Positions 32,201-56,300 of a stretch of DNA of 64,000 bases are shown here, piece after piece. A program made the position numbers and the translations under genes. Below the pieces are notes generated by a model. It was not told the DNA's origin, did not search any database, and worked only from the letters and a program-made list of their open reading frames with translations. The DNA is from Pocillopora damicornis (Eukaryota): contig NW_020847248.1 in the NCBI RefSeq assembly GCF_003704095.1, forward strand, positions 868,001 through 932,000. The letters are read 5' to 3'. How positions within the stretch are numbered: the first letter of the stretch is position 1; every line of letters begins with the position of its first letter.

Positions 32201-33756
32201 AATAAAGAAAGAAAAGTGGATAGTCAGCATGAAGAAGGGTTATCTTCTGGTGCTACAGCGGGAATTATTTTGAGTATCATTTTAGTTATCATTCTCGTGG
32301 GTGTTGGCTTCGTCTTAGTGAGGTGAGTGCTTACCTTTCGTGAGTTAGTCGTTGTTTGACTATGAAAAGAAGCCGCGAACAAGTAATTCAGAGCTTATGA
32401 TGCAATTTTTTCCTTGGCCGGGTTTAGGATAATGCCCTCCTTATTAAGAATGAAAAAATCTAAATTAATCCTATTTTCTATTTAACATATAAATGGGTCT
32501 ACAAATGAAAGGATGTGATAGTCATGATCCCTTTGTTTACTTAGTTTTTCAGTAATGATTAGGCGAAATGAGAATTATAAAAATAGTTCATTCATTTTGA
32601 TACAAACGTTTGAGCAGCTTTTTAAGGATTTTTAAAAATACAAGATCCTTGTGCACTACATTAGACCATGACAATAGAATGCTTTATAATCGTTCGATTG
32701 ACTAAGATATCTTTCATGAGACAAAACGGGACAACGTTAGTTATAGGCTCTATAAAATCATCAGTGAGATCGGATGTTTCGACTCTGAGGAACTAATTTC
32801 GTTTCAAGTGTCATTAAAAGAAAAACTGCAATAATACAGGATTTTTCTGATATTCTCTTTCATTTTTTTTATTTTTCCAAAGGTCGCGGGAAAAGGGGTT
32901 GAAAATTTTTAGAACCCCTTTCACACTTTCATTTAACAATCCTGGCTTCGAGCCTCATCATTCCAATCTTCACGACGACAATTCAGGAGGAGTTCCCTTC
33001 AGTATTCCAGAGACTTACGATCCTTACGAGGTAGTAAAACGTCCATCTTCAATAAGCGAAAGACAGTTTCAGAACCCAGAAACATCTGTTTACGAGCAAG
33101 AGTGCGAGAATCCTTTATATCTCGCAAAGAGTAAAGATGGTGATTTCCAAAGCTCAGCTGGCAATCCAATTTATGAGTCCATTAACGGGCACGGGAGTGG
33201 GAATCCAAAGGGACCAAGACCTGAATCTGATTATGGAAGCTTGGCCAAACGAAAATTTCATCCCGATGGCGACCGAAATGAAGAACCACTGTATGCTAAG
33301 CCAAATAAAATAAAACCTCGTTCGCCCTCTGGGTTTAATTCCCCTGAAGCGCAAAATGGCAACACTTATGCCCAGCTTGGCTTGGGGAGCGTTGTGCAAC
33401 CTAGCCAAGATAGTGGTTTTGAGCAGCCTGGGTACGCGTCACTCGCTCCCTTCTCTCGAAATATCCACGGAGGCAATGGCAAAGGTGTTAGTTCTCGCAA
33501 GGGTATTTCCTCGCAGGATAATTTTTGGCCTCAAAACACTGTGCACCCCCAAAATCCCGAAAGCCAGAATGAAAAACCAGTGAGTCCAAGGAAAGCTTGT
33601 TTCCTTGGTTACCCAGCGAGCCGCCTGGCAGATGAGAATTGTAGTAAAGAGCAGTTAAGTAGTAAACAGAAAGTCCGAAGTACAACTTTAAAGGACAAGG
33701 AAACGCCTGTCTTACATCTTCCTACTGAGCCTGGTCCTGAAGAGACGATTATCTGA
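23252..33756 (+). CDS. LRP-like single-pass receptor A: signal peptide, 3x(YWTD propeller+EGF), Ser/Pro/Thr stalk, EGF, SEA-like domain, TM, about 290-aa Tyr-rich tail. Exons 23252-23333, 23970-24381, 25054-25469, 26014-26139, 26406-26805, 27424-27851, 28115-28231, 28551-28956, 29235-29653, 30062-30700, 31147-31190, 31508-31596, 31858-32322, 32883-33756
   Basis: Multiple YWTD/YWSD repeats ([14 protein letters not shown]), CSHLCLL..CACP EGF repeats, [22 protein letters not shown], tail NPLY/NPIY; GT-AG with consistent phase. A 100-N gap lies in intron 1. Confidence 0.9.
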
Positions 33757-37083: not shown

Positions 37084-40000
37084 ATGGTAGTCACCAAGGA
37101 AAGGGGAAACATGCAGCAACAGACTTTTTATAAGCAGTTTCATCCTTTGGTACTTTTGACGTTGGCCGTACTTGTTTCGAGAAATATGGGAGGTGAGTTA
37201 TTCCCAGTTGAGTTAAAATTTGTTAGACTTAATGTCGATGAGCCCACTGAATTGCAAATGTTTTTTTCCCAATTAAAGTTTCACGTTTCAACACCCGGGT
37301 TCTCGGATACGCGGCCGTTTAATTAACGAATTTTGTGTTGTCCTTGTGGCAAGATTTATTCCTCGTGACAAGAGGATAGCAGTAAGAGATAAGAAACACT
37401 AAATTACCACATTGGCTCTTCAGGATCAAAGAAGTTCAAAATCTGCAAGAAAGCGACAATAGTTTTATAAACATCGATTTCCTAAAGGCAGCAAATAGAC
37501 TTTCGAAAGTTCATCGAGTCAAAAAGAAATATTCGTACAGTGGATAGAAAAATTGGTAATTTAGAGTTAACAACTGAGTTGAAAACGTAAATTGACCGTG
37601 AAGAGTTTAAAGGCTGACGTTTCGAGCGTTAGCTCTTCGGCAGAGTGATTGAAAAATAGGTCGCTTTAAACTGATGAGCCTACGACTGAGGCAAGCAACA
37701 TGCACAGTCTGAAAAATTTTCATCTTCACGCCGAGATCCTTTTATTTGATGCTTGTCAAGCTTACTTTTATCCTGAGAAAACAAGGTCAGTCTTATGATA
37801 ACTTGAAATCTCGAAACCGTCTCTGTGTAAGCGATTCAGCCGAATGTTATTCAACTTATTCTACCGAATTACGAAGAAAAGAATTACGTTTAGATTTAGT
37901 TGTAAACATTGTAAACAAGAAACTTTTTAAATAGAGATGTCAAGAAATATGCTGAATCACCCCATATTACGTAGGGATCCATGTTGTGTATCGCGGAGCC
38001 GACATTGTTTACACGTAAAGCCGACGTCATAAGTTGAGTGGACGATTTTTGCAAACAATCCTCTAACAAAACATTACATAACTAGGGAAAAGTCTAATTG
38101 GTATCTAGCATTGAATGACGCTAAATTTTTATAGCCTGTCATTAGCCAAATATCGTCATTTCTTTATTTATAATTGATTTGAAAAATTCTCCTTTAACTG
38201 AGGAGTTCTCAAATAATATTGAACTGAGAAACTTGGTCGATTTTTTTCATGTCAATTGATGTCATATCATATAAGCAATCCAGGGTTTCAAACGTTTCAA
38301 ATAGGAATAACCCTGCATACAGCCGTCGGTGCAATGGAAAATTAGAATAGAATCGAACATTTATACCAAATAGTGCAATATATCGTTGTAGTCATCTTGA
38401 ATGAGGAACATGTTATGCAGTAATTTATTTTGTTTGTCATGTTAACAATTCAGATATGTAAATGAATATCGGGAAAACAAAGATTTAAAACATCATTATC
38501 GATCAAGGATAATAGTTGGCATGGGAATAACTTTCTCAAAGAAAGAAATGTAGATGCAAATGGGGACGAACGGTGCCAGGCATCTAATTTCTCGAGCTGT
38601 GACTGATGCACTGCCTTGCGTAAAAGTTATTTTTGTTTATCTTGCATTTGAGTCACAATTTTCTTAACTCTAGTTTCTATTAAGAATTACGTCAAACGTT
38701 CTTGTGCTCCTGAGGAGCTTTTCAAATCTTTATGTCCACGAGGAAATAAAACTTCAAGTTTGGTTTGTTTGAATCAGTCCGTGATAACAAAGTCTAAATA
38801 TAATAGAAGTTGAACCCACTATTTTATGTAACAATAAGGACTGTGGCTCCTGTTGGGAAGAAAAACATGTTAAAACAAGTTCCGTCACATCATAGGACAT
38901 AATAGGTCCTCGTGCTGCTATGACTATGTAGCCTGGGGCATGATTCCTCGTCAGGTTTATGTAAATTTAGGGCATACTAGCAGCACATTCTAAAGTCTTT
39001 GTTTAGTATACCTCACACACGTCTGAAATTTGTTTTAAAAATTCGTAGCACTAGCATATCACATTCGAATGGAACTTGTCTCGTATCAAGAAATGGTCCA
39101 TTGTCATTGGAGAACAACATTGCCTCTGTTATTTTAGATAAAATTTTTCCATATAGCCTGCACTTGACGAAAAATGTTTAAAAATCTTATGCTGGTAAGG
39201 GGTCAAGATATTACCAGGCCTTGAGAATTTATCGAAAAAAAGTTCCAACCATCCGAGGAGTACATTGCGTTTGTGAAAATGCCACTCTTCTTTTAAAAAA
39301 AGATTGACTGATTGACTTGATTGACACTAGTGTTTCTGCAACGCAGGTTCGCATGGCTGTCAGAGCAACCCAAGCCTCTACTTCATTGACGATCACAATA
39401 TCAAATGTGCCACTGTCAAATCTTTGCAACAACCAAACCCTTCCTTTCAAACGGTAGTCACTAAAATTGCTGAAGGAGCAGGGATTGACATTGATGTGCG
39501 AAACAGAATGATCTATTGGAGTGACACCACGGCGTGGACGATAAACCGAATGAACTTGACTTCAGGAGAAATAAAAGTCATTGTTAGGCATAATGTAGGA
39601 GAGGTTTACTCCCTGGCTGTTGAATGGGAAAGCGGCTTGATCTACTGGACGGATTATATCTACGAGAGAATAGAAGTAGCTAAACTTGATGGGAGCTCCA
39701 GGAAAACTCTTGTAACACAAAACGCGCGTTCGCCTGTTGGAATTTCAGTCGATCCAAGAAGTGGGTAGGTAATTATGGTCTCGGAGTCGTGCATTGCTTT
39801 TTCTATTCTATCTTTATCCTGAGCAAGTTTTATTGGGTAGTGCAGATGGAAAAATTTGACAAGTTTTTCCGACAAGTTCACCAGTATAAGACGTATTAGT
39901 CACGTTTTTGAATAAGGAGGCTGGTTGGGGCAAAGACATCTCTGTAAAGGCAAAAAGCCGCCGATCTCAGTGTTATGAAGAGTTTTGTAAAAGGAGAAGC

Positions 40001-43000
40001 ACTATGCTTACTGAGAACAAACTCGGTTAAAAAATCTGTTGAATTAAAGAAGAAAGAATTTTCACGAATTCGCCTTATAGAACAAGGCTGTCCTCAGGAC
40101 CTCGTCGAAGAGATCTAAGCCGAATTACAATTCTCATCACGCAACACGCAAACAAAACGAAAACATTTAGAAAGATTTTGCCGTTCGTTACGACTTTCAA
40201 CCCTGCTAACAAGAATCTTAAAAAGATTCTTATGAAACAATGGCATCTTATTTAAGGCAACAATTGTTGCTTATCGGAAGGACAGGTCTCTAAAAGATTC
40301 TCTTGTTATAGCGCAACTTCCTTCACTTTAATTACAAAACAGCATCGAGGAGTTATAATATTAATTCATAATATGTAGAGAGACTGCGTAATATATCGTA
40401 AGTATTTTTTTTTGCAGATACATGGTTTGGGTGGAGCACGATTACGCAACGAGGAAGATAATGCGTGCAGATTTGACAGGCGAAAATCCTGTAGAGTTGC
40501 AAAAACTTTTTTATGGCTTGCCTCTATATGTCATTATTAATCACAGCGATAGTCGAGTGTACTGGACCGATATTCATCGTTCATTTACTTTTATTGGGTC
40601 AATTGGAATTAACGGAAATCATTTCAGACGTGAGAAATATCTTCATCCAACTTATTTCCCATTTGATTTGGCAATCTCTCAAAATATCTTTTATTGGGCT
40701 GACCAGAATTTGCATGGAGTCTCGTGGTTCAATCAGAGTTCGTCTTCCAGTGTGGTGAATCTTCAAAATCTATCTCCTCTTGATTTAATTGGAGTGGCAA
40801 TATCTGATTCATCAACTCAACCAATAGGTATTTGATAAACATCTTTGAGATGCATGATTTCATAAAGTGTCATGCGGCAGAAACGATTTGAAGTCAGAGT
40901 ATGAAGAGAGGGTTTAGTCACTATGTGCCTACCTTTTTTAGTTAGTACTGTTAAAATGTCTCTCGAAATCACCATCTGAAGTATATATACTTTTCAAAGC
41001 TTCTTGTAGAGACCAGTGGCATAGTTAAGTCCTAATCAAATTTCATCCACGACCCGCTTTCATTGGCAAGCCCTATTGTTAAAGAAAATTCTAAGTAGCA
41101 GTTAAATGACAAAACCTTTTTTTTCATGGGGGAAAGTTTCCCATTCGACAAAGAAAAATATCAAGGGAACACTCATCAGGGAAATTAATCTCTGTAAATG
41201 AGTCCTCTTTCAGTGAAAACGGCGCAAATTTATATTCTTCTCTATTTTCAGCGATCCAGGAAAATCCGTGCGTAGTCAATGATGGAAATTGCAGCAATTT
41301 GTGCCTGTTAACCCCAGGAAGGGCAAGAAAGTGCGCCTGCCCTGAAGGAATTAAATTAAGGAATGACAGCATCACTTGTGAAAACGGTAAGTGAGTACAA
41401 CCAAGAAATGACTTAGATGAGAATGCAAATGATCATTGATTAAGCTAGGACTAGAGTAACTATTACTGCTGCTGTTTACAGTACTCTACGAAATTATTAC
41501 AGTTTTAGGGTGTAGACCATAAATCCTACGCTCTAAACTTTTCAACAAATTCATGACGCCAAAAGCGCATAACCTAGGTTATATGCTTTTGATGCCGCTG
41601 AATTCATAAAAACTCCCTAAACAGTACTCTGTAGATAAAAAATGAAAGTTTGTGGCCTTATAAAGAAAATCACTTTTACGATATCATGTCACATTTCATG
41701 AAATACGTCCAGACGTTCACTCTGAAGTGAAGATTGCGCCTCTAAGTAAAAATGAATACTAACTCAGCCAATGTCTTGGAGTCTAAAACAGCGTATAATG
41801 AGAGACAAAGCAGTAGTGAAAAACTGAGAATGGCGACGATAGTTTTTAGGCGAAACGTGAATCATTTCATCATGGCTCTAATGCAAGAATATGTTTGGTT
41901 CTGTAGAAACTGCGGCTGCAACACTACCACCGCCCCTTCCAGGTATGTTCTCAATCCTTAGCATATTAAGCACTTTAAATTAAGGTCGTGAATACAATGG
42001 TCAAAATATCGCTAGCTTTGCACGAAGTTGCTATCACAGGTGCAGTCCAGGGAGCATTTTGTTATCAAAACAGTAAGCGATTCACATCATTACCGACTGC
42101 CATTAATGACTGTATATTCTATCAGTGCAAATCAGAATTGACGGAATTCATTGATGACAAGTGTTCTTCATCACACTTAAAGGAAAATGGTCTTTTTCGT
42201 TCAGTTAAGTTTTGATTAAAATATGGTGGAACGGACAGCTCTAAAAAGTTCCATATATACAGGAAGCCAACATAATTAAAAGTTGCTATGAACACTAGGA
42301 AGTTAAACACCACTACTTACAGACTTATGTTGCTTGAACCTCTAGCCATACAAGTTCGCCTCAGGCCCCGGAGCGCCTCCAAGGAAGGTAAAGGCCGTGT
42401 CGAGGTTTTCTATAACGAAGTTTGGGGAACAATTTGTGATGACTACTGGGGTCTCGACGAGGCGCACGTTATCTGTCGCATGTTGAACTATTCGGGAGCA
42501 CAATTTGCACCCCGGAATGCATTCTTTGGCCGTGGATCAATTTTTATGCCAATTCACTTAGACAATATTAAGTGTCGAGGCGACGAGTCGACAATTGCTG
42601 CGTGTCGCCATAATGGTTGGGGCCAAAATGACTGCTTACATTCAGAAGATGCCAGTGTGGTATGTTGGACCGACTCGGCTCCTCCTATTCAAGGTATGGA
42701 GCCTCTTGTAGTACAGCGTTCTCGCGATGAACAATTCCTCTTTATTGTTTGTTCGTCGTTTAAACGATAGTTGTTATATTTCTGATTTGTATTTGTAACA
42801 ATAGAATATTTTGATTCACTAGAATTGCAAGAGTGCACCAGGAGTCTCTAACTTCTGTGTTTAGAAATGGCTCAGTTCCTCTTTCATTCACTCCTTTCTT
42901 ATTGAAACTATGAGAGTTACCAACGCCAAGAGGTCTTAATTTCGTAATCCCTCTGTTAAAGTTGTACATTCTGCCTTCCAGTGTGGATAAGGATGCTCAT

Positions 43001-46000
43001 TGCTGAGCTCTGTTCCACAAGTACGATCAAAATGTTCAAGTTCAGCGATCGTATGATAAAAAGCCAAATATTTTATTCCACTTTGCAGAGCCAACTTTGG
43101 CCCCTGGACCCTATCCAGGTACTTGTCTCTTTTGAATTTTGAAGTTAGTTGATCACTGTATCTTGTTCCACGTATAACAATGTATGTAAAGTTACGCTGT
43201 GTACTATTGAATGGCCTCGTGCCGGCGCCTTCTAGTGAAGGTGATGAAGATGGTGGTAACAACATTGAAGATGGCGGCATTGACCACTTCATTCTGCAAT
43301 GATACCTTGAAGAAATGAGGAATCAAAAGCGGTCCTTCACTGCGCATAATTTGCTGAAATTAGACCATTGAGTATGATTTTCAAGACTGTATACTTTCGA
43401 GATTGATTATTTCGATCAGTTCCTTGCTAAATTCGATCAATCGCTCGAGAGCTAAGGAGAATTCACAATAGGTGATACAGACATGGATTGGTTAAAGCTA
43501 ACACTCTCAGTGTAACCCGAATCTTCCCGTAGGGAAGTCCAAAATATCTACTGCGATATAAATGTAGTATGATGAGTCTTTAGAAATGTATAATTTAATA
43601 GTTTTATGATTCCTTGTCTCACTTCAGAACTAAAAGTGCGATTACAAGGTGGAGACAATTATTATAAGGGTAGAGTTGAAATTTACCTGAATGGAACCTG
43701 GGGAACAGTATGTGACGACTCTTGGGGAATTGAAGAAGCCAACGTCATTTGCCGAATGCTGAACCACACAGAAGGAGCCGTCAGCACGCAGTGCTGTGGA
43801 TTCTATAATGGATATGGCGTTTCCGAAAAGATTTGGCTGGATGATGTTCACTGCGTTGGAGATGAAAATAGCATCGCGGAGTGTCGCCATGGCGGCTGGG
43901 GAAAACACAACTGCCGTCACTCAGAAGATATAGGGGTCGTTTGCAAGCATGCTCCATTATCAACACCAGGTATACCTCGTTTTTCTTTCTTTCTCTTTTT
44001 TTCAATTCCCCAGCCACCGTTGCCTGTCTCCCTTCCTTCCCATTTCAAATATTTCTTTAATTACACTTAAGTCCAATATCGGCTCTGTTATACCGAAATT
44101 ATCGGAAGGACAATTTTAAATCCTGAAATCGCTTGTTTATTTACCGTTTAGCTTCAACTCATGTAATCTGTGCCATGACATTCAGTTAAATTTCTAAAAT
44201 TAAATTAAGGATATTTCTTGTCGAGGAATAAGTGGTTGTGCTGTTGACTCTCCTCTCCGGGTAATAGGTGAACGCACAGATGCAAAGAAAATTGAATGGG
44301 ATAGAAAGAGAGGCAGGGATAACCATGCCCTTAGACGAGTAACACCACCTAGGCACACTTAGCCACTTTGATAACAGAGGCGCTTCTATTCTTTCCCCCT
44401 TCGTTTTTGTAATATAAGTCTACAGTGTTCATTATTGTTTTCTATCAAGATCAAATTGTGCGACTAGCAGACGGAGCTCGAGAGAGCGAGGGACGTGTGG
44501 AAATATTCCATAATGGAGAGTGGGGAACGGTTTGTGATGATCACTGGGATATCAACGATGGAGATGTTGTATGCAAAATGCTAAATTACTCGAGAGCACT
44601 GCGAACCCCCAAACAGGCTTTCTTCGGTCCAGGAAATGGTAAAATTTGGCTTGGCAATGTGAAATGTAGCGGGAATGAAACAAGTCTTTTGCAGTGTGGA
44701 AACCCGGGTCGGAATGTTGACATTTGTGACCACCACGAAGATGCATCTGTTATATGCGAAACTGAGGCACCACATTTAGGTAAATTAAAAACCCTTTGAG
44801 GGTCACATGGTATATGTTGTATAAACCTAATTTACTTAACTTTACAGTTCACCACCCTTTTACACTCTCAGAGTTTTGATTTATTTAACATTTAGCTCTA
44901 TAGCCTCAACTACTTGCTAGGAACTCGAGCAACGAACTTCGGATCGCAAAGAAATTGAACAAAAGGATTAATGAAAGAGTGTTAGTGCAGGTAATCCCAC
45001 GACACTGAGAGAATTTTTCTACCTTTAAACAAGGTTGTGCAACCAGGTCATTTTTTTTAAGGTCAATTTTAGAGGTTTTTTAACCAGGTCACTTTTCGAA
45101 GGTCAATTAGATAAAGTAGATTTCGTTCGGAATTAAGAAAATTTCGGAATGAAAAGTAGTCTTGAGAACAGATATGTTTGTAAAATACTACAAGCCCCCC
45201 AAAACCAGAAGATATTCGATGAAGAAGGTTAAAAGCGACTGTTTTTTTTTCTTCAGAATCCAAAAGTTTTATTCTAGCATGTGGACTCGGACGAGAACTT
45301 CTTTATCATGTCCCTCTTGATACGAATCTGCCTGAAAAAGGTATGCCCCTGGCAATAGAGACTAACACTCCACTGGCAGTAACCTTTAACATTGAAGACA
45401 ACTTGATGTACTGGACAGAACAATCTGGATCTATTCATCGTGCTTATTTGAATGGCAGCTTCAGGGAAGTCTTATTAACAGACCTCATCCGGCCCACGGC
45501 TATTGAAATAGACCACGTGGGTAATAACCTATACGTGGCAGATCAAAATGGTGTCACAGTATCGAAGCTTGATGGTTCATATCAGACTCTCCTGATCAAC
45601 ATGACATCTTGTCATGGAATTGCTTTAGACAGCGTAGCAGGGTAAGATTTCTTTTTCTTTTTTTTATAATCTTCATTGCTTGCACACATATGCATCATAA
45701 CATTTCCTGCACTCTGACTAAAAAAGTTTTCCATTTGAATTTATTTTCCACAGGTATATATATTTCACTGTGACTGGTATTAGTCCAAGAATATTACGCG
45801 CAGACATGGATGGTAAAAATCCGCTTGTTTTGGCCAATGTGTCCTCCATAAGAGGAACCATATTGGACATAGCATTGGACAAGGTCAACAATCGACTTTT
45901 TTACTCGGACGAAGGCAACAACATGGTGAAGTATATCAATTTAACCAGTGGAGTGCATCACGCTGTGCTGTACGGTAATCCTCGCAGACCAGTTGGTCTT

Positions 46001-49000
46001 GCCTTATTCAATGGAACCCTTTACTGGACCGGTGAAGGGACTGTGGAGTTGTTTAGTGGTGGCATCTATAAGGTTAAAGCTGACACTTTAAATGGGGGCA
46101 TCGTTCGTGAGGTGGTGGACCTTCTTTCGTATCCTAAAGGAATATATGCTCATGACGCCCGAATGAAGATACCAGCAGGTGGGATCTTTATTAAAAAAAG
46201 TCTCGCCATAATCATTTTTTGCAACAACAAAAAAACGGTTTTAACCTTATTTTCTTTTTTTGCTTTCGTCTCTTATTTTTGTTTTCGATCATTATCTGCT
46301 AAAGTGGGTTTCTTGGCATATGAGAGGAAAACTGATCGATAAAGAAGGAGAGAGAGCAGAGAGGACCAAGAAATAAGCTCACAAGTTACTCCAAAACCAG
46401 TCGTGCAGCATGAGAGAATTTGTGTCAGTTGTCTTCTGTAAACATTTTTTTAGAAAATGATTTCAAATGAATGGTATCAATCGTAGAAATCGGAATATAA
46501 TTAAAAAAGAGACTTACACTATCCTTTACGAACCCAGGTTTTACTAAATGCTTTCGACTGTGCGCAAATAAAGCATTTCGTTGTGACGCGAAATTTTGTG
46601 CACGGTACGCATGCAATGCTTGATTTTTTTTTATTTGATCGAGGTAAAAGTTGTAACAGCTCAGTGCATTAGCATTCGAGTCAAGGTAATACAAAATATT
46701 CTGCTTTTGAATTACTTTCTACTTTTTTTTTTGCCTTTAGTCGATGATAGTCATCCTTGCGCTAGAAACAATGGCAGTTGTTCCCACCTCTGTTTAATAA
46801 ACCCAACAGGCCACAGCTGCATCTGTGTCGGAGCAGGTTCATGCCAGACATCTGTCAGCTCATCAGCCTCTATTACAAGCGCCATGTCCTACTCATCAAC
46901 AACTCATGCTACTGCAACATCAACAGAAATTCATGCTTCAGCCTCAGTTTCTTTATCAATCTCATCTCCGATGTCCTCATCATCACCTTCCATGACCTAC
47001 CATATGGTGACTGAACACGCACACACAACAACAGTCAACTTTTCCCCTTCACCGGTGGCTCCGACGGCAACACGTGTAAGCCTTACACCTTCCCAAACCC
47101 CGTCTGATATCTGTGCATCGCAAAATCCTTGTGAGGATCGAGGTAGCTGCCAAGCTGATGTTATCGAAGGCTACAAATGCGTGTGCTTGGAATATTTTAT
47201 TGGCCAAGACTGTTCAATAGACATAAGTATGTTATTTAGTTTGGTGGTTAAATAGTTATAGTGTTTGTCTTCCTTTGTAACTGTCATAAGAGGGGGAAGT
47301 GATCACGTTGGAGTACAGGTTCGCATATAAAATATATAGGCTTGTTAGATACGAAACTATGCCTTCAAAGCGTAAAAACAACGACAACTAGTAAAATTAC
47401 ACTCTTACATGTTCTTCTTCATTGCCTTTTCATTCCAGTTAACATTTTTCTTCCTATTCTTACAACAGCTGATGAAGCAATTCAGAGTACATGGTGTGAT
47501 TAACAAACCAGAAAGCGTGGAACAGAGGGGGGAAGGGGGTTGGCGTGGGAAAGCAGATTTTGTTTGAAATTTGGCAAGTGTTTCATGAAAAGCTTAACCA
47601 CTGAGGTCCCTGGAAAAAGGAGTTCAATTCGTCTTTTTGATAAATGTTTACAAAGTTTGAATACAAAGTCGCGTATATCTAAAGCCCTGTCTACATGGTA
47701 ATTACCTGCAAGAATGCTCTTGTCTGTTATAGAGCGAGAAGAGGAGGTAAAACTTATCGCTTGATATTTTGATTTTCTCCACAGGTGAAGGAGTGGTGGT
47801 CCTTGTCATAAAAATTCAAGGAAATGAGGTAAGGGGGAGAGGTTACTGCCTAATATAGAGGAATCAGTCTCTAGGATTTTACAATAAGAACTAAAAATGC
47901 ACCCTCTCTCGACATTATTATTATCAGGGAATTAAGAGGAAAGAGGTTACCGCGGTATCTAATTTATTTCTAAAATTTGCTGATTACAATTGCATGTGCT
48001 CAAATTATCCAGACAACATAATAACCGATTAAAAACACCTTTCCTTTCGAAATCCTCAAAATGAAAAATTGTATTGCAAGAATAAGCTTACAGAGTAATA
48101 AATTTAAATTTTCATGAAATTTACTGTAAACGTTTTAACTCCATTCCACAGTTCAACAAAACCGACCTGAAGCAAGTCATCCTTCAAATCTTGAATCGCC
48201 TCTGTGAAGATCCCGAAAGCGAACAGTGTCCAATAACAACATCAGGGTAAGCAAATGCTGATAAAGGTAAACCTATTTCCCCCGAGCAGGCCTGTTCTTT
48301 GTTCTGGAATTTCTTGTAGAGTTAACAGTTCAATGTGAACAAGGCCAAACTCATCGACTTTTCAAACTGTGGGCTGTGCTCGTCCATATCCTTTGTTTAA
48401 CATTCACAAATGCCTCAAAGTTGGAAAACCACTAGTAAACACCACGAAATGATGAGGATATTTAGTATTATCAACTGAGTTGATAACGTAAACTAACCAT
48501 CATAAAGAGTTTCAAAGCTGATGTTTCAAGTGTTAACCTTTCGTTAGCCCTTCGTCATTCGCTCTGACGAGGAGCGAACGCCCGAAACGTCAGCTCTGAA
48601 ACTCTTTAGTGACCAATTTACCTCATAAACTCAGTCGATAATACTAAACTAGCCTGACTTTAAACATATGAAAATCATAAATGTGTGCTGCGGTTGAAGA
48701 AATGAATATAGAAGCGATCCTCGCAGTTATGAACACTATTGAACNNNNNNNNNNNNNNNNNNNNNNNNNNNNNNNNNNNNNNNNNNNNNNNNNNNNGCTA
48801 ACTAGCCAGCTGGGAGCTGGTCATTATGTTGGATCCAAATAAGACCTTAAAGTGGGGAATAATGACTGTAAATATATGAAAATCATATATGTGTACCGCG
48901 ATTGAAGAAACGAATATAGAGGCCATCCTCGTAGTTATGAACACTACTTAACTACCTATTTTAAGTAATAGTTGAAACATTAGAGCCTTATTTCAACTAC

Positions 49001-50892
49001 TAGTTAAGTAGTGTTCATAACTGCAAGGATCGCTTTTATGTTCGGTACTTAATTAGCCTGTTATACTCAGCCACCGACGCAGCATCACAGTTTCTCTAGA
49101 CACTTACCCCCTTTAACGACCAAACGATCGTTTCACAGATATGTCTGTTAAGCTTAATTTGAGAATCACAACAAAGATCTCCAGTAGCTGCGAAGCTCTA
49201 ATGGCAAATTGTAAGCTTTATTGAGGTGCCGTTTCCATCTTATAGAGGTGTTAAACTGTGGAGACCTTATAATGTTTTTATTTGCCAATTTCTTAAGCGG
49301 GGCAAGAAGAAAACGAGAAGTGCCAAAGGAAACTTTCAGTCACGCAGAGGTCATAGTAAAGGAACCGAAAAAAATCAATGGTAACCTTCAAGTAGAGCTA
49401 GCTGTCATCAAACGGATGTCCAATGGTTCAATATTTGTTATATCTGGCGCAAATCTTGCCAGGATAGTAAACGCTTCGGCGGCAGAAATCGGTCATAAAC
49501 TGGGAGGGACGTTATTAAGTGTCATGTCGAAATTCCCTGGACCAACAGCTCAGGCTACACAGTCTACCATGCCGGTTGATAATTCCACGACAATAACACA
49601 AAAACAACCCCAGGATAGCACGACAGTACCTGGAACAACGACCGGTCAGGTACCAGCTGGTCCGGGTTCTGCAGCTGCCAATAAGGGAGGAGGAGACAAC
49701 GGTGGAGTTATCGGCGGTGTGGTGGTAGCCTCCCTTGTTATCATCATCTTGGTTATCGCACTGGCGGTCTGGTATTTCAGGTAATAAACTTTGATTCATG
49801 ATTTCCTTAATTCATACTAGCAAAGATTAAAAAAACCAAAACCCTCCATGGTAAGCAACCAACGGAAGATAACAGCCAGTTTTTTTTTCTCTATTCATCT
49901 CAAATGAGGGAAAAAGAGAGCAGCACAGAATACAATAAAAAATACGAAAAAAGGGAACTAAAACCATATAAAACCTAACAATAATATAATAATATTTAAT
50001 ACTTATATTGCGCTTTTTCTATAAAAATACTGAAACATGTACATGTACATGTACTCAGCTGCTAGACATGTACGACTGAAATGGAGATCAAACACCAAAC
50101 AAAAGTGTGGATAATTGAGGTTGATTCTTAATGTATTGAGAGAATTTCCACTTTTGTTTCCTTGTAAACGGAAGAAAAAACATACCCTGAAGGCGATACA
50201 TTTGCAAAAACAAAAAAAAAACTATCGAAAGCGAGCGTTTGTCCTAATACAGCAGCAAAACTCGAGTAATCTTTAAACAAGAGGGTGTGTCGTGTGGTTG
50301 CTACTAATGAATCACTCTAAAGCGAAATCCTGAGGGAAAACAATGAATTCAACGCAATTGTTCAGCTCGTTGTAAACTAAGAATGAATAACGGAGGACGT
50401 AGCTAAAAACTATCACCAGAAGCCTATTAGTAAAAAAAGCTGAAAAAATTGAAATGTAACAAAAACCAGAATCAAGTAGCACAATTCGTTTCTTTGCAAT
50501 ATTTCCTAATCCATTTCATTGGTTTTTTTCTGTCAAAAGGGTAAAAATTCCAAGTCTCGCTTTTTCTTACAAAAGGAACAGTGATGGTCCTGAGCTACGA
50601 GTGGCTTCGTTTGAGAATCCCGGATATGAAACCGGAATAGGATTTGCGACACATGGTGATGATCTATACCAAGATCTACCTCCGCCGGTTGTTCTATCCC
50701 CGTACGAGGATCTCAATGACTATGGCGCTGTTAGCAATCCTATGTACTCTGAATTTGGCGCCGACCATGAAGCTTCGGTTAGGAGGTCTAATTTCGGTAC
50801 AAGTTTGTTCAGCAGCCATGGGAAAGAAACCGAGATTGGAGCGAATGATGCTAAGAAAAGCAATGGAAGTATGGCAGTAAATAAGATCTCTT
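37084..50892 (+). CDS. LRP-like/SRCR hybrid receptor B: signal peptide, YWTD propeller, EGF, 3x SRCR, YWTD propeller, EGF, Ser/Thr stalk, EGF, SEA-like domain with RRKR, TM, tail with NPxY and ITAM; stop codon hidden in the gap. Exons 37084-37192, 39347-39764, 40418-40827, 41252-41386, 42346-42693, 43628-43969, 44450-44779, 45257-45641, 45754-46178, 46741-47226, 47785-47828, 48152-48246, 49298-49780, 50540->50892
   Basis: IYWTD repeats; three GRVE..WGT[IV]CDD..W...C..L...I[WH]L[DG]..C.G.E..C....C.H.ED..V.C SRCR domains; TM GGVVVASLVIIILVIALAVWYF; exon phases consistent and matching receptor A. Confidence 0.9.
39978..40330 (+). mobile_element. Penelope-like retroelement ORF remnant (region C-terminal to RT), frameshifted and with stops
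   Basis: Reads FVKGEALCLLRTNS...KILPFVTTFNPANKNLKKILMKQWHLI...IVAYRKDRSLKDSLV, resembling the PLE post-RT segment. Confidence 0.7.
48461..48648. mobile_element. Inverted pair of Penelope-like terminal repeats (palindrome) containing minimal hammerhead motifs
   Basis: tttagtattatcaactgagtt ... aactcagtcgataatactaaa arms; + strand gct-CTGACGA-ggagcgaacgccc-GAAA-cg-TC-agc at 48561-48594. Confidence 0.75.
48665..49045. repeat. Tandem repeat with a unit of about 210 bp spanning an N-gap, ending in an inverted partial unit
   Basis: atatgaaaatcata..gtgt..gcg.ttgaagaaa.gaatataga...atcctcg.agttatgaacacta occurs twice; its reverse complement tagtgttcataactgc.aggatcgc is at about 49008-49035. Confidence 0.75.
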
Positions 50893-51255
50893 NNNNNNNN
50901 NNNNNNNNNNNNNNNNNNNNNNNNNNNNNNNNNNNNNNNNNNNNNNNNNNNNNNNNNNNNNNNNNNNNNNNNNNNNNNNNNNNNNNNNNNNNTAGTTTCA
51001 CATTTTTAATTATATTTTTCTAAAAGATCTAGTTAGCTCTAATTGCGACACACAATAACGAAAGGGCGAGGTTTAGCTAAATTATTTTATGGTTTTGTTT
51101 GTTATTAAAAAGTCCATATTTTTGGATGGAAACCATGTTAGGAGTTTGTTCAATTTTGTGAAATTTAAATTATGGGCATTGCTACTTATTTCGCAGCATT
51201 TTTAAACCAGTGTAATTCATAGCTCAGACGCCTTGTTAATCTCTTCGCCGTCTTC

Positions 51256-51563
51256 TCAAACAAGAACGGTTTGGCCTTTGTTTTCACGCCCCTGGTTTGT
51301 ACCAGTCTCCTTGCCATCATGTTTCATTTTGACCACACTGTTATCTTCCAAAGAGATCTTATTTACTGCCATACTTCCATTGCTTTTCTTAGCATCATTC
51401 GCTCTGATCTCGATTTCTTTCCCATGGTTGCTGAACAAACTTGTACCGAAATTAGACCTCCTGACCGTAGCTTCATGGTCGGCGCCAAATTCAGAGTAAA
51501 TAGGATTACTAGCTGTGCCATAGACATCGAGATCCTTGTCCGGGGATAGGACAACCCAGGCGG
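51256..51563 (-). pseudogene. Inverted partial duplicate of the last exon of receptor B
   Basis: 51351-51563 is the reverse complement of 50682-50892 with about 16 substitutions and a 2-nt indel (counted by eye), and continues LEDNSVVKMKHDGKETG...VLV*. Confidence 0.85.
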
Positions 51564-53361: not shown

Positions 53362-56300
53362 ATCCATATCATCCTCTCTAAGAAACTCTATGAGCTTCTC
53401 TACAGTTGCCTCACGTTTACGAGACCACAGGTCAAGAAGATCACAGGTAGGATTTGGTGACCGTTTTAAATTTTTTATTTCATCTTGATCAAATCCCATT
53501 TTCTCTCCAAGAAAGCGATAATCTTGAAAATGATCATTATCTTCTATATTAAGTTTAAGACAGATTCTACGCTTCACTTTAATTGGAATGTCTGCGGCTT
53601 TAAAAGATCGCCCAGTGGCAGTCACTTTAGCCTGATCTGCATTTGAATCATTATCGTTTGCACTTTTTAGGTCTGCTGCGGCATTATCCATCTGATTCAT
53701 TCCACTGCCCTTTTTGATCTTCTTGTTATCCTCAACGCCTGGCCTCTCATCCTCCACTATGTTACATTCATCTATAAACAGGAAAGGAACAAAGAATAGG
53801 TTGCCCTCTTTTGGTAATGGAGAAAAAAACATTCGTAACCACCGCTAATGAACATAACCTTTTTTTTAGGCTTGCTTAGGGGGGATATATAAACTTTAAT
53901 TTAATTTATACAGGCTCACACGAATACACACACAGACAACACCCACAAATTGTGATAACGAGTTAAACCTACATAGCTAGGGATATATTATTTAAAAATC
54001 AAACAATGGCCATTGAAAAGTGATTAGTATTGATTATAAAAATTGGCACTTCGCGGAAAAAAAGCACAATTGACATCGTAATTTACAGACTCAACACCTT
54101 ACATTAAAAAGTTTAGTTTCCTTGCATCGCCGCTCGAAGACCATGTCTCATGTTACTAGCAGCAGAGGTAAGGAGGACATTACATTGAGCGGCATACCTC
54201 GGGCAATACAAGGAACAATGTTTCACTGATTCAGAGTCAACACCGTAGTCGCAAATAGGCGACGCAAAACTAAAAATTTTGAAGCCTTTTTCCCCAAGAC
54301 TAGAAAACCCAAGTCAAAGGTTGTTGTGATCAAAAGATACACGCCTTGAAAAATAACAATCGTGTAACCTACTGTAAGTATTTCTCCTGACCAAGTACAA
54401 TTCTCCTATTTTATGTTGAAAACTAGATATGATTTACAAATGTATTCAACTTAACCATTTAGGATAGTGCTGCATAAGCCATATTGCTCTTGCAGCATTA
54501 GGAGAGGTAAACTTCAATTAATCATTCCCTCTTTTCTCCAAAGCTGACATGATGTGTTTTGACACTTTCAGTAGGGAGGTATCCAAAGTTTTATGACATA
54601 AAGTCACGTAAAGAGCAGATGTTGTTAGACAGCAATTCATTGGTTGACATCCTTGAGCTAATACATCATTAGATGGTGGTGGGTGTATTTTTCAAACATT
54701 TTACCTGGTTCACTTTTACTGAATGAAGAATTGTTGCCATTTAGAGGCATATCATCTTCTGATCCTCTTGCGCTTGTGCTTGTGCTGGGGAGACCATCCT
54801 GGACAGATCTCCCAGTCATGTGGGTTGGACCACAAGCTGTCAAAACAATCATGTAAGAAAATTTTTTTTTCTACATCTAAAAAAAATCCTCCTCATATCC
54901 TTTTCTATTTGTGGGGGTCAAAAAAGTAAGCAAGGAATTGTTTAATGTGGAAACAAAAACAAGCATCAAGACATCATCAGTGAGGAAGTTAAATTTTTTT
55001 TCTGGCTACTGGGTTGATCAGTTCAAAGTTTAAGCTTATGGTGACAACACTGGGCCCAGCCGGAAAACACGGGCTGAATTTACTAGAAAACAGGGAAATC
55101 ATGATATCCCATATGCAGAAAGAAAGGGGAAGGAGTAGAAAAAAGACTTGTCTCTTGAATGAAACTGGGTATTAAATTTCAGAGTTACTTTTCATCAATT
55201 TGAGATCATTTATGTCTAAGTTTCTAACAAATGTGTTTTGATATTGAAATCTCTTAATTTGAATGTTACAGTAAGACTTAGGGTTTTCTGCATACTACTT
55301 CTTTTATATTTCATAAATGAGTCCAGTCTTCTATTGGGTTTAAAATCACCAACAAACGGTGAGTGACTTTGGACCTGACTGCAATTTTATTGGAGGTCTT
55401 TCCATTCCTAGAAAATTGTGTCAAAACAGAACTCAAAACATTGATGATTTTGGAAATTAGCCTAGAAAAAAAAATAATTCCAAATTGTAATGGACTGATT
55501 TATTATAGTAGGCCTGAAATTGAGACAAGTGAGATGGACTGTAAAGCTCCAGCCAGATTTTCTTTTTCTTCTTTTTTTCACTTCTTTTTTTTTACTGTAC
55601 CTGGGTAAAAAACAATTTCCCTACAGTCACAGGGGTTGTTGATCTTTTCAGTTTCTTAGCCCACTGAAGATAGCCATGGTCTAGCTAAATGCCTGGGATC
55701 AAAAGTCATGATTACAGTCATTATACTGACAGACTAAAAACTTTTTCTTTCCCTAGGATAAAAGAACACTTTAACTAGGCCACAGTTTTCCTTCAAATAA
55801 TATGCAACTTCCCTGACCTGAGACTGCATTAATTATTTCACTAACACTCTTTACCTGGGTAGTGGGGCAAATCAGTCTCGTCAGGTCCAGTTGTATTACC
55901 TTGATACAAACAAATTAATTTCATGAGTACACATGACCCAATACCCACATTGCTGGTTTAATGTTCAGAAAAGTAAAAAATGAAAGCATACATTCCTAGA
56001 AGAAGACAGAACACCGATTGATGCTATAACATTACCTTGAGACTTTGGGAGAGGGCCCACTAAATTGGATAATATGTCATTAAATAAAACGTTTTTATGC
56101 ATATACCCTTTTGTCTATACAATGTCAACATTTCCTGAAAACTAGCCACATGACAACTTTAACACGGACAAAGTGTGTAATTCTGCGAACCCCACTTGAG
56201 TGGGGTTCGTGCATATGTATGAGCATTGTTACCAAGTAACGCGTGACGTATTTTACGTCACGTTCCACTGTGGTAAAACCTGTTTGGATGCGGTCGGAGA

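What the first reader, a model, noticed from the sequence alone, without database searches (positions are those of the whole stretch)
50610..50760. Canonical ITAM flanked by two NPxY motifs in receptor B
Seen: FENPGY...GDDLYQDL-PPPVVLSP-YEDL-NDYGAVSNPMYSEF, i.e. D-x-x-YxxL-x8-YxxL (50658-50714), matching the ITAM consensus. Known: NPxY plus ITAM is the Draper/CED-1/MEGF10 engulfment signature (GULP/CED-6 and Syk/Shark recruitment). Finding it on an LRP-SRCR ectodomain is unexpected.
Basis: partly seen in the sequence, partly recalled or inferred. Interest (0 to 1): 0.75.

Follow-up and report, generated by a model that had tools for sequence, protein, structure and literature searches.

The report
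ITAM-like tail of coral scavenger receptor
The inner tail of a coral-type cell-surface receptor carries a two-tyrosine signal that looks like the activation switch of vertebrate immune receptors and is kept in most, but not all, of its relatives, so it is a good candidate to test rather than a proven switch.

Summary
Window 50658-50714 encodes D-D-L-YQDL-PPPVVLSP-YEDL, with FENPGY (50610-50627) before it and NPMYSEF (50736-50756) after it.

The exon is spliced in frame to the transmembrane exon in polyA RNA contigs of 4 of 4 runs from 2 studies. The tail is therefore expressed and, by topology, cytoplasmic.

The gene (37111-50892, + strand) encodes, in order:
- a YWTD propeller with EGF
- three SRCR domains
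- a second YWTD propeller with EGF
- a mucin stalk
- a transmembrane helix

It has no LDL class A repeat, so it is not a full LRP.

Among 28 distinct tails of this subtype, 20 meet YxxL/I-x6-8-YxxL/I. Two of those 20 belong to full-length relatives with the same architecture. The other eight depart from the pattern, in at least seven independent events. Five of the eight keep one of the two motifs intact.

Three further points argue against a classical ITAM:
- The spacer is as conserved as the tyrosines.
- In paralogs the second tyrosine is usually phenylalanine.
- The closest full-length relative reads YEDF.

The genome does encode a Syk-like and a Shark-like kinase locus.

Verdict: this is a real, conserved tyrosine-based block in an LRP1/Draper-like tail. 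ITAM function is plausible (about 0.3) but unproven. Separate, redundant YxxΦ/SH2 sites fit the variation at least as well. The scan holds one other, untested note of an ITAM-like tail elsewhere in this genome.

The parts
37111..37192 (+). Exon 1 of receptor B: start codon and signal-peptide-like hydrophobic stretch, followed by a GTGAGT donor
   Evidence: Sequence read. The N-terminus resembles that of the full-length relative P0053. No RNA was laid on this exon.
39343..41385 (+). Exons of the first YWTD (LDL receptor class B) propeller and an EGF-like module
   Evidence: Pfam Ldl_recept_b, E 2.6e-13. Collinear tblastn of P0053 residues 27-349 at 86-88% identity.
42345..44778 (+). Three exons, each encoding one SRCR domain
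   Evidence: Pfam SRCR, E 1.6e-28, 1.2e-30 and 7e-33. P0053 residues 362-711 match at 87-90% identity.
45256..46178 (+). Two exons of the second YWTD propeller
   Evidence: Weak Pfam Ldl_recept_b. GT..AG RNA joints 45641/45754 in 4 of 4 runs and 46178/46741 in 3 of 4 runs. P0053 residues 712-980.
46741..47226 (+). Exon with an EGF-like module, a Ser/Thr-rich mucin-like stalk and a second EGF-like module
   Evidence: Pfam FXa_inhibition and EGF. RNA joints at both ends.
47785..48246 (+). Two small exons (47785-47828 and 48152-48246) with the intron between them
   Evidence: GT..AG RNA joints in 4 of 4 runs.
49298..49780 (+). Juxtamembrane and transmembrane exon. Multibasic RRKR at 49305-49316; hydrophobic helix GGVIGG...AVWYF at 49701-49778; the exon ends two bases into an Arg codon.
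   Evidence: RNA joints 48246/49298 and 49780/50540. Sequence. RRKR/RRRR is conserved in 5 of 5 sequences of this subtype.
49781..50539 (+). Last intron (759 nt, GT..AG)
   Evidence: Skipped in RNA contigs of 4 of 4 runs. Records X5-17 and X8-22 have 255 or more letters on each side.
50540..50892 (+). Readable part of the last coding exon: the cytoplasmic tail R-VKIPSLAFSYKRNSDGPELRVAS...NKIS
   Evidence: No Pfam family matched.
50610..50627 (+). Proximal FxNPxY motif (FENPGY)
   Evidence: Its six positions are each kept in 27-28 of 28 tails of the subtype.
50658..50714 (+). ITAM-pattern block DDL-YQDL-PPPVVLSP-YEDL
   Evidence: Conservation.
50736..50756 (+). Distal NPxY followed by a hydrophobic residue at +3 (NPMYSEF)
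   Evidence: N, P and Y are each kept in 25 of 28 tails; the +3 residue is F, I, V or M in 27 of 28.
50893..50992 (.). Run of 100 N that cuts off the end of the tail exon; not filled
51220..51555 (-). Inverted partial copy of the 3' part of the tail exon. It begins inside the spacer of the block, and the second Tyr codon reads Asp (SPDKDL).
   Evidence: (84% aa identity to residues 38-105).

Best explanation
Window 50540-50892 encodes the expressed cytoplasmic tail of a cnidarian type I receptor. The ectodomain, in order, is: YWTD propeller with EGF, three SRCR domains, YWTD propeller with EGF, mucin stalk, multibasic site, transmembrane helix.

The tail carries four tyrosine motifs in a fixed order: FENPGY, YQDL, YEDL and NPMYSEF. 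I read it as an uptake-and-docking tail of the LRP1/CED-1/Draper kind, working as follows:
- The two NPxY motifs bind PTB-domain adaptors.
- The two acidic YxxΦ motifs between them act as separate, partly redundant sites. Unphosphorylated, they would serve as adaptor-complex sorting signals. After phosphorylation by a Src-type kinase, they would bind SH2 proteins.

In this species and most relatives the two middle motifs also satisfy the ITAM pattern. A Syk-like or Shark-like kinase is therefore a possible reader, but the tail need not be an obligate two-tyrosine unit.

Shown: the sequence, the splicing, presence in polyA-RNA assemblies, conservation of the block, and presence of Syk-like, Shark-like and PTB-domain loci in the genome.
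Inferred: membrane topology, phosphorylation, which proteins bind, and any role in uptake or immunity.
For: - Motifs and frame. In-frame GT..AG joint from the TM exon to the tail exon in 4 of 4 RNA runs.
- Domain content of the window's exons and of three full-length relatives: the L016 ORF, P0052 and P0053. All have 3 SRCR, YWTD and EGF-like modules.
- Conservation across 28 distinct tails of the subtype: FENPGY 27-28 of 28; Y1 23; Y2 26; Asp at +2 of Y1 28; Ser at -2 of Y2 28; distal NPxY 25.
- By my reading of the rows, 22 of 28 tails have two YxxΦ in the block (20 of them with L/I), 5 have one, and 1 has none.
- The single losses (P0008, P0031, P0032, L014, L015) leave the rest of the block intact. 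Redundant sites would tolerate this.
- The +3 residues seen in the two motifs of the block are L, I, V, M and F, which is the sorting-signal set rather than L/I only.
- LRP1 has two NPxY as adaptor docks and a YxxL as its main uptake signal (PMC11325810, passages).
- MEGF10, Draper and CED-1 combine NPxY with an ITAM or YxxL (PMC8092387, passages).
- PID/PTB domains: 9 matches in this genome.
Against: - No experiment exists; every functional step is inferred.
- Sorting signals of the YxxΦ type need Tyr, yet the second position is Phe in most paralogs and in P0032. At family level that position may serve as a plain aromatic contact.
- The proline-rich spacer is as conserved as the tyrosines. 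Neither the sorting-signal reading nor the plain SH2-site reading explains this.
- Leu at -1 of Y1 (26 of 28), mostly acidic residues further upstream, and a spacer held at 7-8 residues also fit a true ITAM.
- Species labels for the relatives are missing, so orthologs and recent paralogs cannot be told apart.
Confidence: 0.45

Rival explanations
1. It is a true ITAM. A Src-type kinase phosphorylates both tyrosines after ligand-driven clustering. The two SH2 domains of the coral Syk-like or Shark-like kinase bind them as one unit and start phagocytic or immune signalling, as in Draper and MEGF10.
For: - Consensus met, including acidic residues upstream. Shuffle frequency 0.08-0.56%.
- 20 of 28 distinct tails of the subtype keep YxxL/I-x7-8-YxxL/I. 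These include full-length relatives with the same architecture and tails about 50% identical: L016 (YDDI-x7-YEDL) and P0052 (YEDI-x7-YEDI).
- Spacer length never leaves 7-8.
- 9 of 14 clusters at 90% identity hold an intact member.
- Syk-like locus at C1902: SH2-SH2-kinase, with SYK as the best solved match of the first SH2, E 1.5e-46. Shark-like locus at C247: SH2-ankyrin-SH2-kinase. All four SH2 pieces show the Arg of the FLVR-type motif (read).
- ITAMs and both kinases are reported in Hydractinia (PMC9546547, passages).
- Upstream ITAM receptors for cnidarian Syk are postulated but unnamed (PMC5978004, passages).
Against: - 8 of 28 tails break the pattern, through at least 7 independent changes. 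Some occur within near-identical pairs, e.g. L013 against L014/L015 at 97.7% DNA identity.
- The closest full-length relative has YEDF.
- Y2 is Phe in 18 of 21 paralog tails, and the pattern holds in 1 of 21. A paralog with SRCR exons in the same genome reads YDDI...FQET.
- Single losses leave the rest of the block intact, which is odd for an obligate pair.
- The conserved spacer is atypical for ITAMs.
- No binding data exist.
Confidence: 0.3
2. The block is a phosphorylation-independent docking peptide. Its key contacts are the prolines, the Ser-Pro, an aromatic residue (Tyr or Phe) and acidic residues. The ITAM match in this lineage is then a by-product of Tyr occupying the aromatic position.
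For: - The second position is aromatic in 28 of 28 tails of the subtype and in 20 of 21 paralog tails, with Tyr and Phe interchanging.
- Ser30 28 of 28, Pro26 27 of 28, Pro31 26 of 28, Glu33 27 of 28: these are as conserved as the tyrosines or more so.
Against: - Within the subtype Tyr is strongly preferred over Phe at both positions: Y1 23 of 28 with no Phe, Y2 26 of 28.
- No known motif class was matched. The tail profile found 0 chains among solved structures and no Pfam family.
Confidence: 0.15
3. The second motif acts alone as an inhibitory (ITIM-type) site, S-x-Y-x-x-L/I/V, or the first acts alone as a hemITAM-like site. Either would explain why single losses are tolerated.
For: - SPYEDL fits [I/L/V/S]xYxx[I/V/L], the ITIM definition quoted in PMC9546547.
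- Ser at -2 is 28 of 28, Y2 is 26 of 28, and the +3 residue is L, I or V in 25 of 28.
- L014/L015 keep only SPYEDV.
- The acidic run before Y1 resembles hemITAM context (recalled). hemITAM-Syk signalling is named in the abstract of PMC10253181 (listing).
Against: - This is pattern matching only, and ITIM patterns are common by chance.
- I did not look for SHP- or SHIP-type phosphatases in this genome.
- Y1 is also well conserved.
Confidence: 0.1

Closest known systems
LRP1 (LDL receptor-related protein 1) cytoplasmic tail
   Same: Both have YWTD propeller-EGF modules outside, a single TM helix and a multibasic (furin-type) site in the ectodomain. Both tails carry a proximal and a distal NPxY plus YxxL. 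In both, the distal NPxY is followed by a hydrophobic residue at +3 (PMC11325810, passages; window).
   Different: No class A ligand-binding repeat in the window's exons or in three full-length relatives. Three SRCR domains sit between the propellers. A mucin stalk is present. Two extra acidic YxxL motifs 8 residues apart are present. I did not look for a dileucine motif.
Draper / MEGF10 / Jedi-1 / CED-1 engulfment receptors
   Same: Single-pass receptors whose tails combine NPxY (read by GULP/CED-6-type PTB adaptors) with an ITAM or YxxL (read by Shark or Syk) (PMC8092387, passages).
   Different: The ectodomain is unrelated: no EMI domain and no long EGF/NIM array. No tail sequence similarity was detected. 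Reader binding is untested here.
Hydractinia Alr proteins with ITAM or ITIM tails
   Same: [quoted passage not shown]
   Different: Alr ectodomains are immunoglobulin-superfamily folds, and their tails are highly divergent. The block here is conserved across relatives, and the ectodomain is YWTD plus SRCR.
Cnidarian SRCR-domain scavenger receptors (survey of six species)
   Same: Membrane proteins with SRCR domains in unusual combinations, proposed to act in microbe and symbiont recognition (PMC5119243, passages).
   Different: That paper's main text has no occurrence of 'ITAM' or 'tyrosine'. Its supplementary tables were not seen.

Membership tests
[quoted passage not shown] | Pattern YxxL/I, 6-8 (up to 9) residues, YxxL/I, often with Asp/Glu upstream | tested here: met
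   DDL-YQDL-x8-YEDL at 50658-50714. Arises in 0.56% of shuffles, or 0.08% with the acidic residue.
[quoted passage not shown] | Lies in the cytoplasmic part of a membrane receptor or its signalling chain | tested here: met
   The tail exon is joined in frame after the hydrophobic helix in RNA of 4 of 4 runs. The signal-peptide-like exon 1 and the extracellular domain types imply a type I topology. The topology itself is inferred.
[quoted passage not shown] | Both Tyr and both +3 Leu/Ile kept in orthologs | tested here: inconclusive
   20 of 28 distinct tails of the subtype; 9 of 14 clusters at 90% identity hold an intact member; at least 7 independent departures; 1 of 21 paralog tails. Species labels were not available.
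[quoted passage not shown] | Both Tyr phosphorylated; bound as a unit by the tandem SH2 domains of Syk, ZAP-70 or Shark | not testable with these tools
   Only the presence of a Syk-like (C1902) and a Shark-like (C247) locus was shown.
LDL receptor family (LRP) | Class A (complement-type) ligand-binding repeats | tested here: not met
   No Ldl_recept_a hit in the 10 ORF pieces of the window scanned or in the full-length relatives L016 ORF, P0052 and P0053.
LDL receptor family (LRP) | YWTD (class B) propellers paired with EGF-like modules | tested here: met
   Ldl_recept_b, FXa_inhibition, EGF and EGF_LRP2 hits.
LDL receptor family (LRP) | Single TM helix and an NPxY-bearing tail | tested here: met
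Draper/CED-1/MEGF10 family | EMI domain and a long array of EGF-like/NIM repeats in the ectodomain | tested here: not met
   No EMI hit and only 2-3 EGF-like modules in three full-length relatives.
Draper/CED-1/MEGF10 family | Tail with NPxY plus an ITAM or YxxL | tested here: met
   Met by pattern only. Family features as described in PMC8092387.
SRCR-superfamily receptors | One or more SRCR domains in the ectodomain | tested here: met
   Three SRCR exons, E 1.6e-28 to 7e-33.

The most novel reading that the evidence does not exclude
The block is a working ITAM. A coral-lineage receptor then uses SRCR domains and YWTD propellers to bind particles or microbes, and signals through Syk- or Shark-like kinases while PTB adaptors sit on the flanking NPxY motifs. 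That would name the first conserved upstream ITAM receptor for cnidarian Syk, outside the immunoglobulin-type Alr genes. The natural variants that lose one tyrosine (P0008, L014/L015, P0032) would be signalling-dead or inhibitory partners of the intact form.
Probability: 0.3. Interest if true: 0.75.

Novelty: new variant of a known kind. Interest (0 to 1): 0.5.

Why it matters
Cnidarians have Syk- and Shark-type kinases, but the receptors that feed them are largely unknown. One paper infers ancient ITAM-bearing upstream receptors without naming any (PMC5978004). The only cnidarian ITAM candidates I found in print are the Hydractinia Alr proteins (PMC9546547).

This receptor is a concrete candidate for testing whether ITAM-type signalling drives particle or symbiont uptake in corals:
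- It is conserved and expressed.
- Its ectodomain is of the scavenger type.
- Its tail matches the pattern.
- Natural variants that lack one tyrosine exist.

If the block proves to be only a pair of sorting signals, the gene is still worth noting. It is a lineage-specific hybrid of LRP-type propellers and SRCR domains with an LRP1-like uptake tail.

Tried and rejected
- My first splice guess (acceptor at 50575 or 50581) was wrong. RNA contigs place the acceptor at 50539/50540. The frame is unchanged.
- Pfam found nothing in the tail. A profile of ten tails found 0 chains among solved structures at E up to 10.
- The word search with the tail exon found only short ORF-type pieces (8 proteins). 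The full HMMER search found 26 proteins, all 49-224 aa. Two further word searches with full-length relatives, scored on the tail only, found just P0052 and P0053 (2 of 162 and 2 of 1091 candidates). No named or annotated protein was obtained, and no species label.
- I considered that the inverted copy next to the N gap was an assembly slip and rejected it. Both halves of the broken copy recur as ORFs on many public contigs.
- I tried to confirm the organism from assembly figures in papers. One search was badly formed and the corrected one found nothing.
- I did not try AlphaFold on the tail, since a disordered tail alone would say nothing. A model of the tail with the SH2 pair would need a joined sequence, which I left out.
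- Literature searches for a coral ITAM receptor found none of this kind. The library holds open-access papers only.

Rows dropped before the counts:
- L032 has no FxNPGY anchor.
- P0002-P0006 and P0046 are pieces of the broken copy.
- P0010 and P0012 start after the anchor. Both read YNDI-x7-YEDI, the same cluster as P0007.
- P0042, P0049 and P0050 lack the block.
The split into 28 tails of the subtype and 21 paralog tails is my own, made by eye from the alignment.
Full report
**What is in the sequence**

The window is a eukaryotic stretch, G000:C3883:868001-932000, from a genome of 234.35 Mb in 4,393 contigs. In the frame 50568+3k the + strand reads ...RVASFENPGYETGIGFATHGDDLYQDLPPPVVLSPYEDLNDYGAVSNPMYSEFG....

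- The block D-D-L-YQDL-PPPVVLSP-YEDL is 50658-50714.
- FENPGY is 50610-50627.
- NPMY is 50736-50747, followed by S-E-F.

The exon runs into 100 N at 50893-50992. The gap was not filled, so the end of the tail is not read here.

**Is it an expressed cytoplasmic tail?**

I laid contigs of four polyA RNA runs from two studies on 45300-50890. They show GT..AG joints at:
- 45641/45754
- 46178/46741 (3 of 4 runs)
- 47226/47785
- 47828/48152
- 48246/49298
- 49780/50540

All but the second are seen in 4 of 4 runs. The last joint links the exon that ends ...GGVIGGVVVASLVIIILVIALAVWYF plus two bases to the tail exon. The junction codon is Arg and the frame continues VKIPSLAFSYKRNSDGPELRVASFENPGY.

My own first guess of the acceptor, 36 bases further on, was wrong. 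These are assembled contigs, so they show the spliced form exists in RNA libraries, not how abundant it is.

The topology is inferred from three things:
- a signal-peptide-like exon 1 (37111-37192)
- extracellular domain types upstream of the helix
- basic residues after the helix

Together they suggest a type I receptor with this tail inside the cell.

**The gene**

The window's ORF pieces, scanned separately, give in order:
- YWTD class B repeats
- three SRCR domains (E 1.6e-28 to 7e-33)
- YWTD repeats again
- EGF-like modules around a Ser/Thr-rich stalk

Natural full-length sequences served instead:
- L016 is a 5,330-base metagenome record with one open frame of 1,553 residues.
- P0052 (1,516 aa) and P0053 (1,526 aa) are database proteins.

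All three show the same order of domains, and none has an LDL class A repeat. P0053 maps collinearly on window 39343-50891 at 66-90% identity per exon.

The ectodomain is therefore LRP-like in its propeller-EGF modules only, with SRCR domains where ligand-binding repeats might be expected.

**Chance**

I shuffled the 117 readable tail residues 200,000 times. The results were:
- The ITAM pattern arose in 0.56% of shuffles.
- With an acidic residue at -3 it arose in 0.08%.
- Two or more NPxY arose in 0.03%.

That is uncommon for one tail but not enough by itself across a genome.

**Relatives**

- The word search with the tail exon gave 8 short ORF-type proteins.
- Pfam and the word search left the tail open, so I ran the full HMMER search with a five-sequence profile. 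It gave 26 proteins, all 49-224 aa.
- A scan of metagenome records gave 26 loci.

From 55 tails with the FxNPGY anchor, 49 distinct 62-residue cores were aligned. By eye I split them into 28 of the window's subtype (block of the type L-Y-x-D-Φ-(P)-x-P-V-V-L-S-P-Y-E-D-Φ) and 21 others.

In the subtype, 20 of 28 meet YxxL/I-x6-8-YxxL/I, always with a 7- or 8-residue spacer. Among them:
- L016 reads YDDI-x7-YEDL.
- P0052 reads YEDI-x7-YEDI.

Both have the full SRCR-bearing architecture, and their cores are about 50% identical to the window's.

The eight that fail:

| Tail | Departure |
|---|---|
| P0008 | first Tyr to Cys |
| P0031 | first Tyr deleted |
| P0032 | second Tyr to Phe |
| P0037 | YQEM |
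| P0043 | both lost, and FENPGF |
| P0053 | YEDF; the closest full-length relative |
| L014 and L015 | first Tyr to Ser, and YEDV |

L014 and L015 are 97.7% identical in DNA to the intact L013.

Clustered at 90% identity outside the four key columns, the subtype forms 14 clusters. Nine hold an intact member, two of those nine are mixed, and five hold none. That makes at least seven independent departures.

In the other 21 tails the pattern holds once (P0036), and the second position is Phe in 18.

Within this genome the tail has only three further matches:
- Two are pieces of one broken copy.
- One is a paralog at 983 kb that reads YDDI...FQET. That paralog also has SRCR exons between YWTD exons.

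**What the conservation pattern says**

Column counts in the 28 tails:

| Position | Kept |
|---|---|
| F, N, P, G of FENPGY | 28 |
| E and Y of FENPGY | 27 each |
| Leu before Y1 | 26 |
| Y1 | 23 |
| Asp at +2 of Y1 | 28 |
| L or I at +3 of Y1 | 27 |
| Spacer P26 | 27 |
| Spacer V27 | 24 |
| Spacer V28 | 23 |
| Spacer L29 | 24 |
| Spacer S30 | 28 |
| Spacer P31 | 26 |
| Y2 | 26 |
| Glu after Y2 | 27 |
| Asp at +2 of Y2 | 26 |
| L or I at +3 of Y2 (V 2; M, F, G 1 each) | 23 |
| N, P and Y of the distal NPxY | 25 each |

The whole block is under constraint, spacer included. It is therefore a functional element, but its pattern differs from classical ITAMs, where the spacer is free (established knowledge, recalled).

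From my reading of the rows:
- 22 of 28 tails have two YxxΦ motifs in the block.
- Five have one.
- One has none.
- Each single loss leaves the rest of the block intact.

That is what two partly redundant sites would allow, and it is less expected for an obligate pair. The Tyr/Phe interchange at the second position across the family points to an aromatic contact at family level, with Tyr favoured in this subtype.

**Readers in the genome**

SH2 and tyrosine-kinase family searches of the genome place two SH2 domains and a kinase on one strand at two loci:
- At C1902 the order is SH2-SH2-kinase. The first SH2 finds SYK (E 1.5e-46) and then ZAP-70 as its best solved matches.
- At C247 ankyrin repeats lie between the two SH2 domains, which is the Shark arrangement.

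Nine PID/PTB matches exist as well. These are domain orders along DNA, not verified transcripts.

**What is known**

- LRP1's tail has two NPxY as adaptor docks and a YxxL as its main uptake signal, and LRP1 is cut by furin (PMC11325810, passages).
- MEGF10 and Draper combine NPxY with an ITAM read by Syk or Shark. CED-1 has NPxY and one YxxL (PMC8092387, passages).
- Pattern-defined ITAMs and ITIMs, and Syk- and Shark-like kinases, are reported in Hydractinia (PMC9546547, passages).
- Syk in cnidarians, and the idea of unnamed ancient ITAM receptors, come from PMC5978004 (passages).
- A survey of cnidarian scavenger receptors does not mention ITAM or tyrosine in its main text (PMC5119243). 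Its supplements were not seen.
- Four searches found no report of an ITAM on a coral YWTD or SRCR receptor in the open-access library.

**Verdict**

The label 'canonical ITAM' is a pattern match.

My estimates:
- 0.45: an LRP1/Draper-like uptake-and-docking tail in which the two acidic YxxΦ motifs act as separate, partly redundant tyrosine sites.
- 0.30: a true ITAM read by Syk- or Shark-like kinases.
- 0.15: a phosphorylation-independent docking peptide.
- about 0.10: single-site inhibitory or hemITAM-like readings.

It is a new variant of a known kind and of moderate interest, with a clear bench test.

One earlier, untested note of this scan (s1-773130) reports another tail with NPxY and ITAM-like motifs elsewhere in this genome.

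Noticed in passing
window 51220-51555 (-) and L003 1505-2135 (G000:C3883, about 960.2-960.8 kb, -): There is a broken duplicate of receptor B's 3' end. The 3' part of the tail exon lies inverted just past the N gap. The 5' part, with about 490 nt of intron, lies 40 kb away on the same strand (85% DNA identity to window 50047-50695). The break falls inside the ITAM-pattern spacer, and the two pieces share about 14-16 nt of the parent sequence. Both halves recur as ORFs on many public contigs.
   Followed up: partly
window 49305-49316: A multibasic RRKR site, a candidate furin-type cleavage site, lies about 155 residues before the end of the TM helix. RRKR or RRRR is kept in 5 of 5 sequences of the subtype.
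   Followed up: partly
window 53362-53832 (-): An open frame with a death domain (Pfam E 1.5e-8) lies on the opposite strand and runs into an N gap. It lies between the two pieces of the broken duplicate, near a noted YWTD death-receptor candidate beyond the window's end.
   Followed up: partly
window 48292-49226: The intron before the TM exon holds a very high-copy repeat. Summed RNA-contig depth reaches about 10,000, with many opposite-strand joints and loose ends.
   Followed up: no
window 46875-46879: 18-base in-frame insertions relative to the window appear in the mucin-stalk exon in RNA contigs of 3 of 4 runs, so the stalk varies in length.
   Followed up: no
L004, L033, L034 (G000:C3883:981.6-1004 kb, -): A tandem paralog, or paralogs, has SRCR exons between YWTD exons, possibly with two SRCR clusters. 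Its tail reads FENPGY...YDDI...FQET...NPIY, without the second Tyr.
   Followed up: partly
L005 (G000:C1902:14500-24499) and L006 (G000:C247:185500-195499): L005 is a Syk-like locus (SH2-SH2-kinase). L006 is a Shark-like locus (SH2-ankyrin-SH2-kinase). These are domain orders along DNA only.
   Followed up: partly
relatives L007-L017, L022, L023, P0027-P0032, P0052, P0053 (C-termini): Relatives' tails end in a conserved ...GQ(T/A)VLVLE...SE(M/L) C-terminus. The last three residues resemble a class I PDZ ligand (recalled rule). The window's own end lies in the N gap and was not read.
   Followed up: no
window 32899-33756 (+): The tail exon of the neighbouring receptor A reads FNNPGF...YDPYEVV...NPLY...NPIY. 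It has NPxY motifs but no ITAM pattern and no Pfam family.
   Followed up: partly
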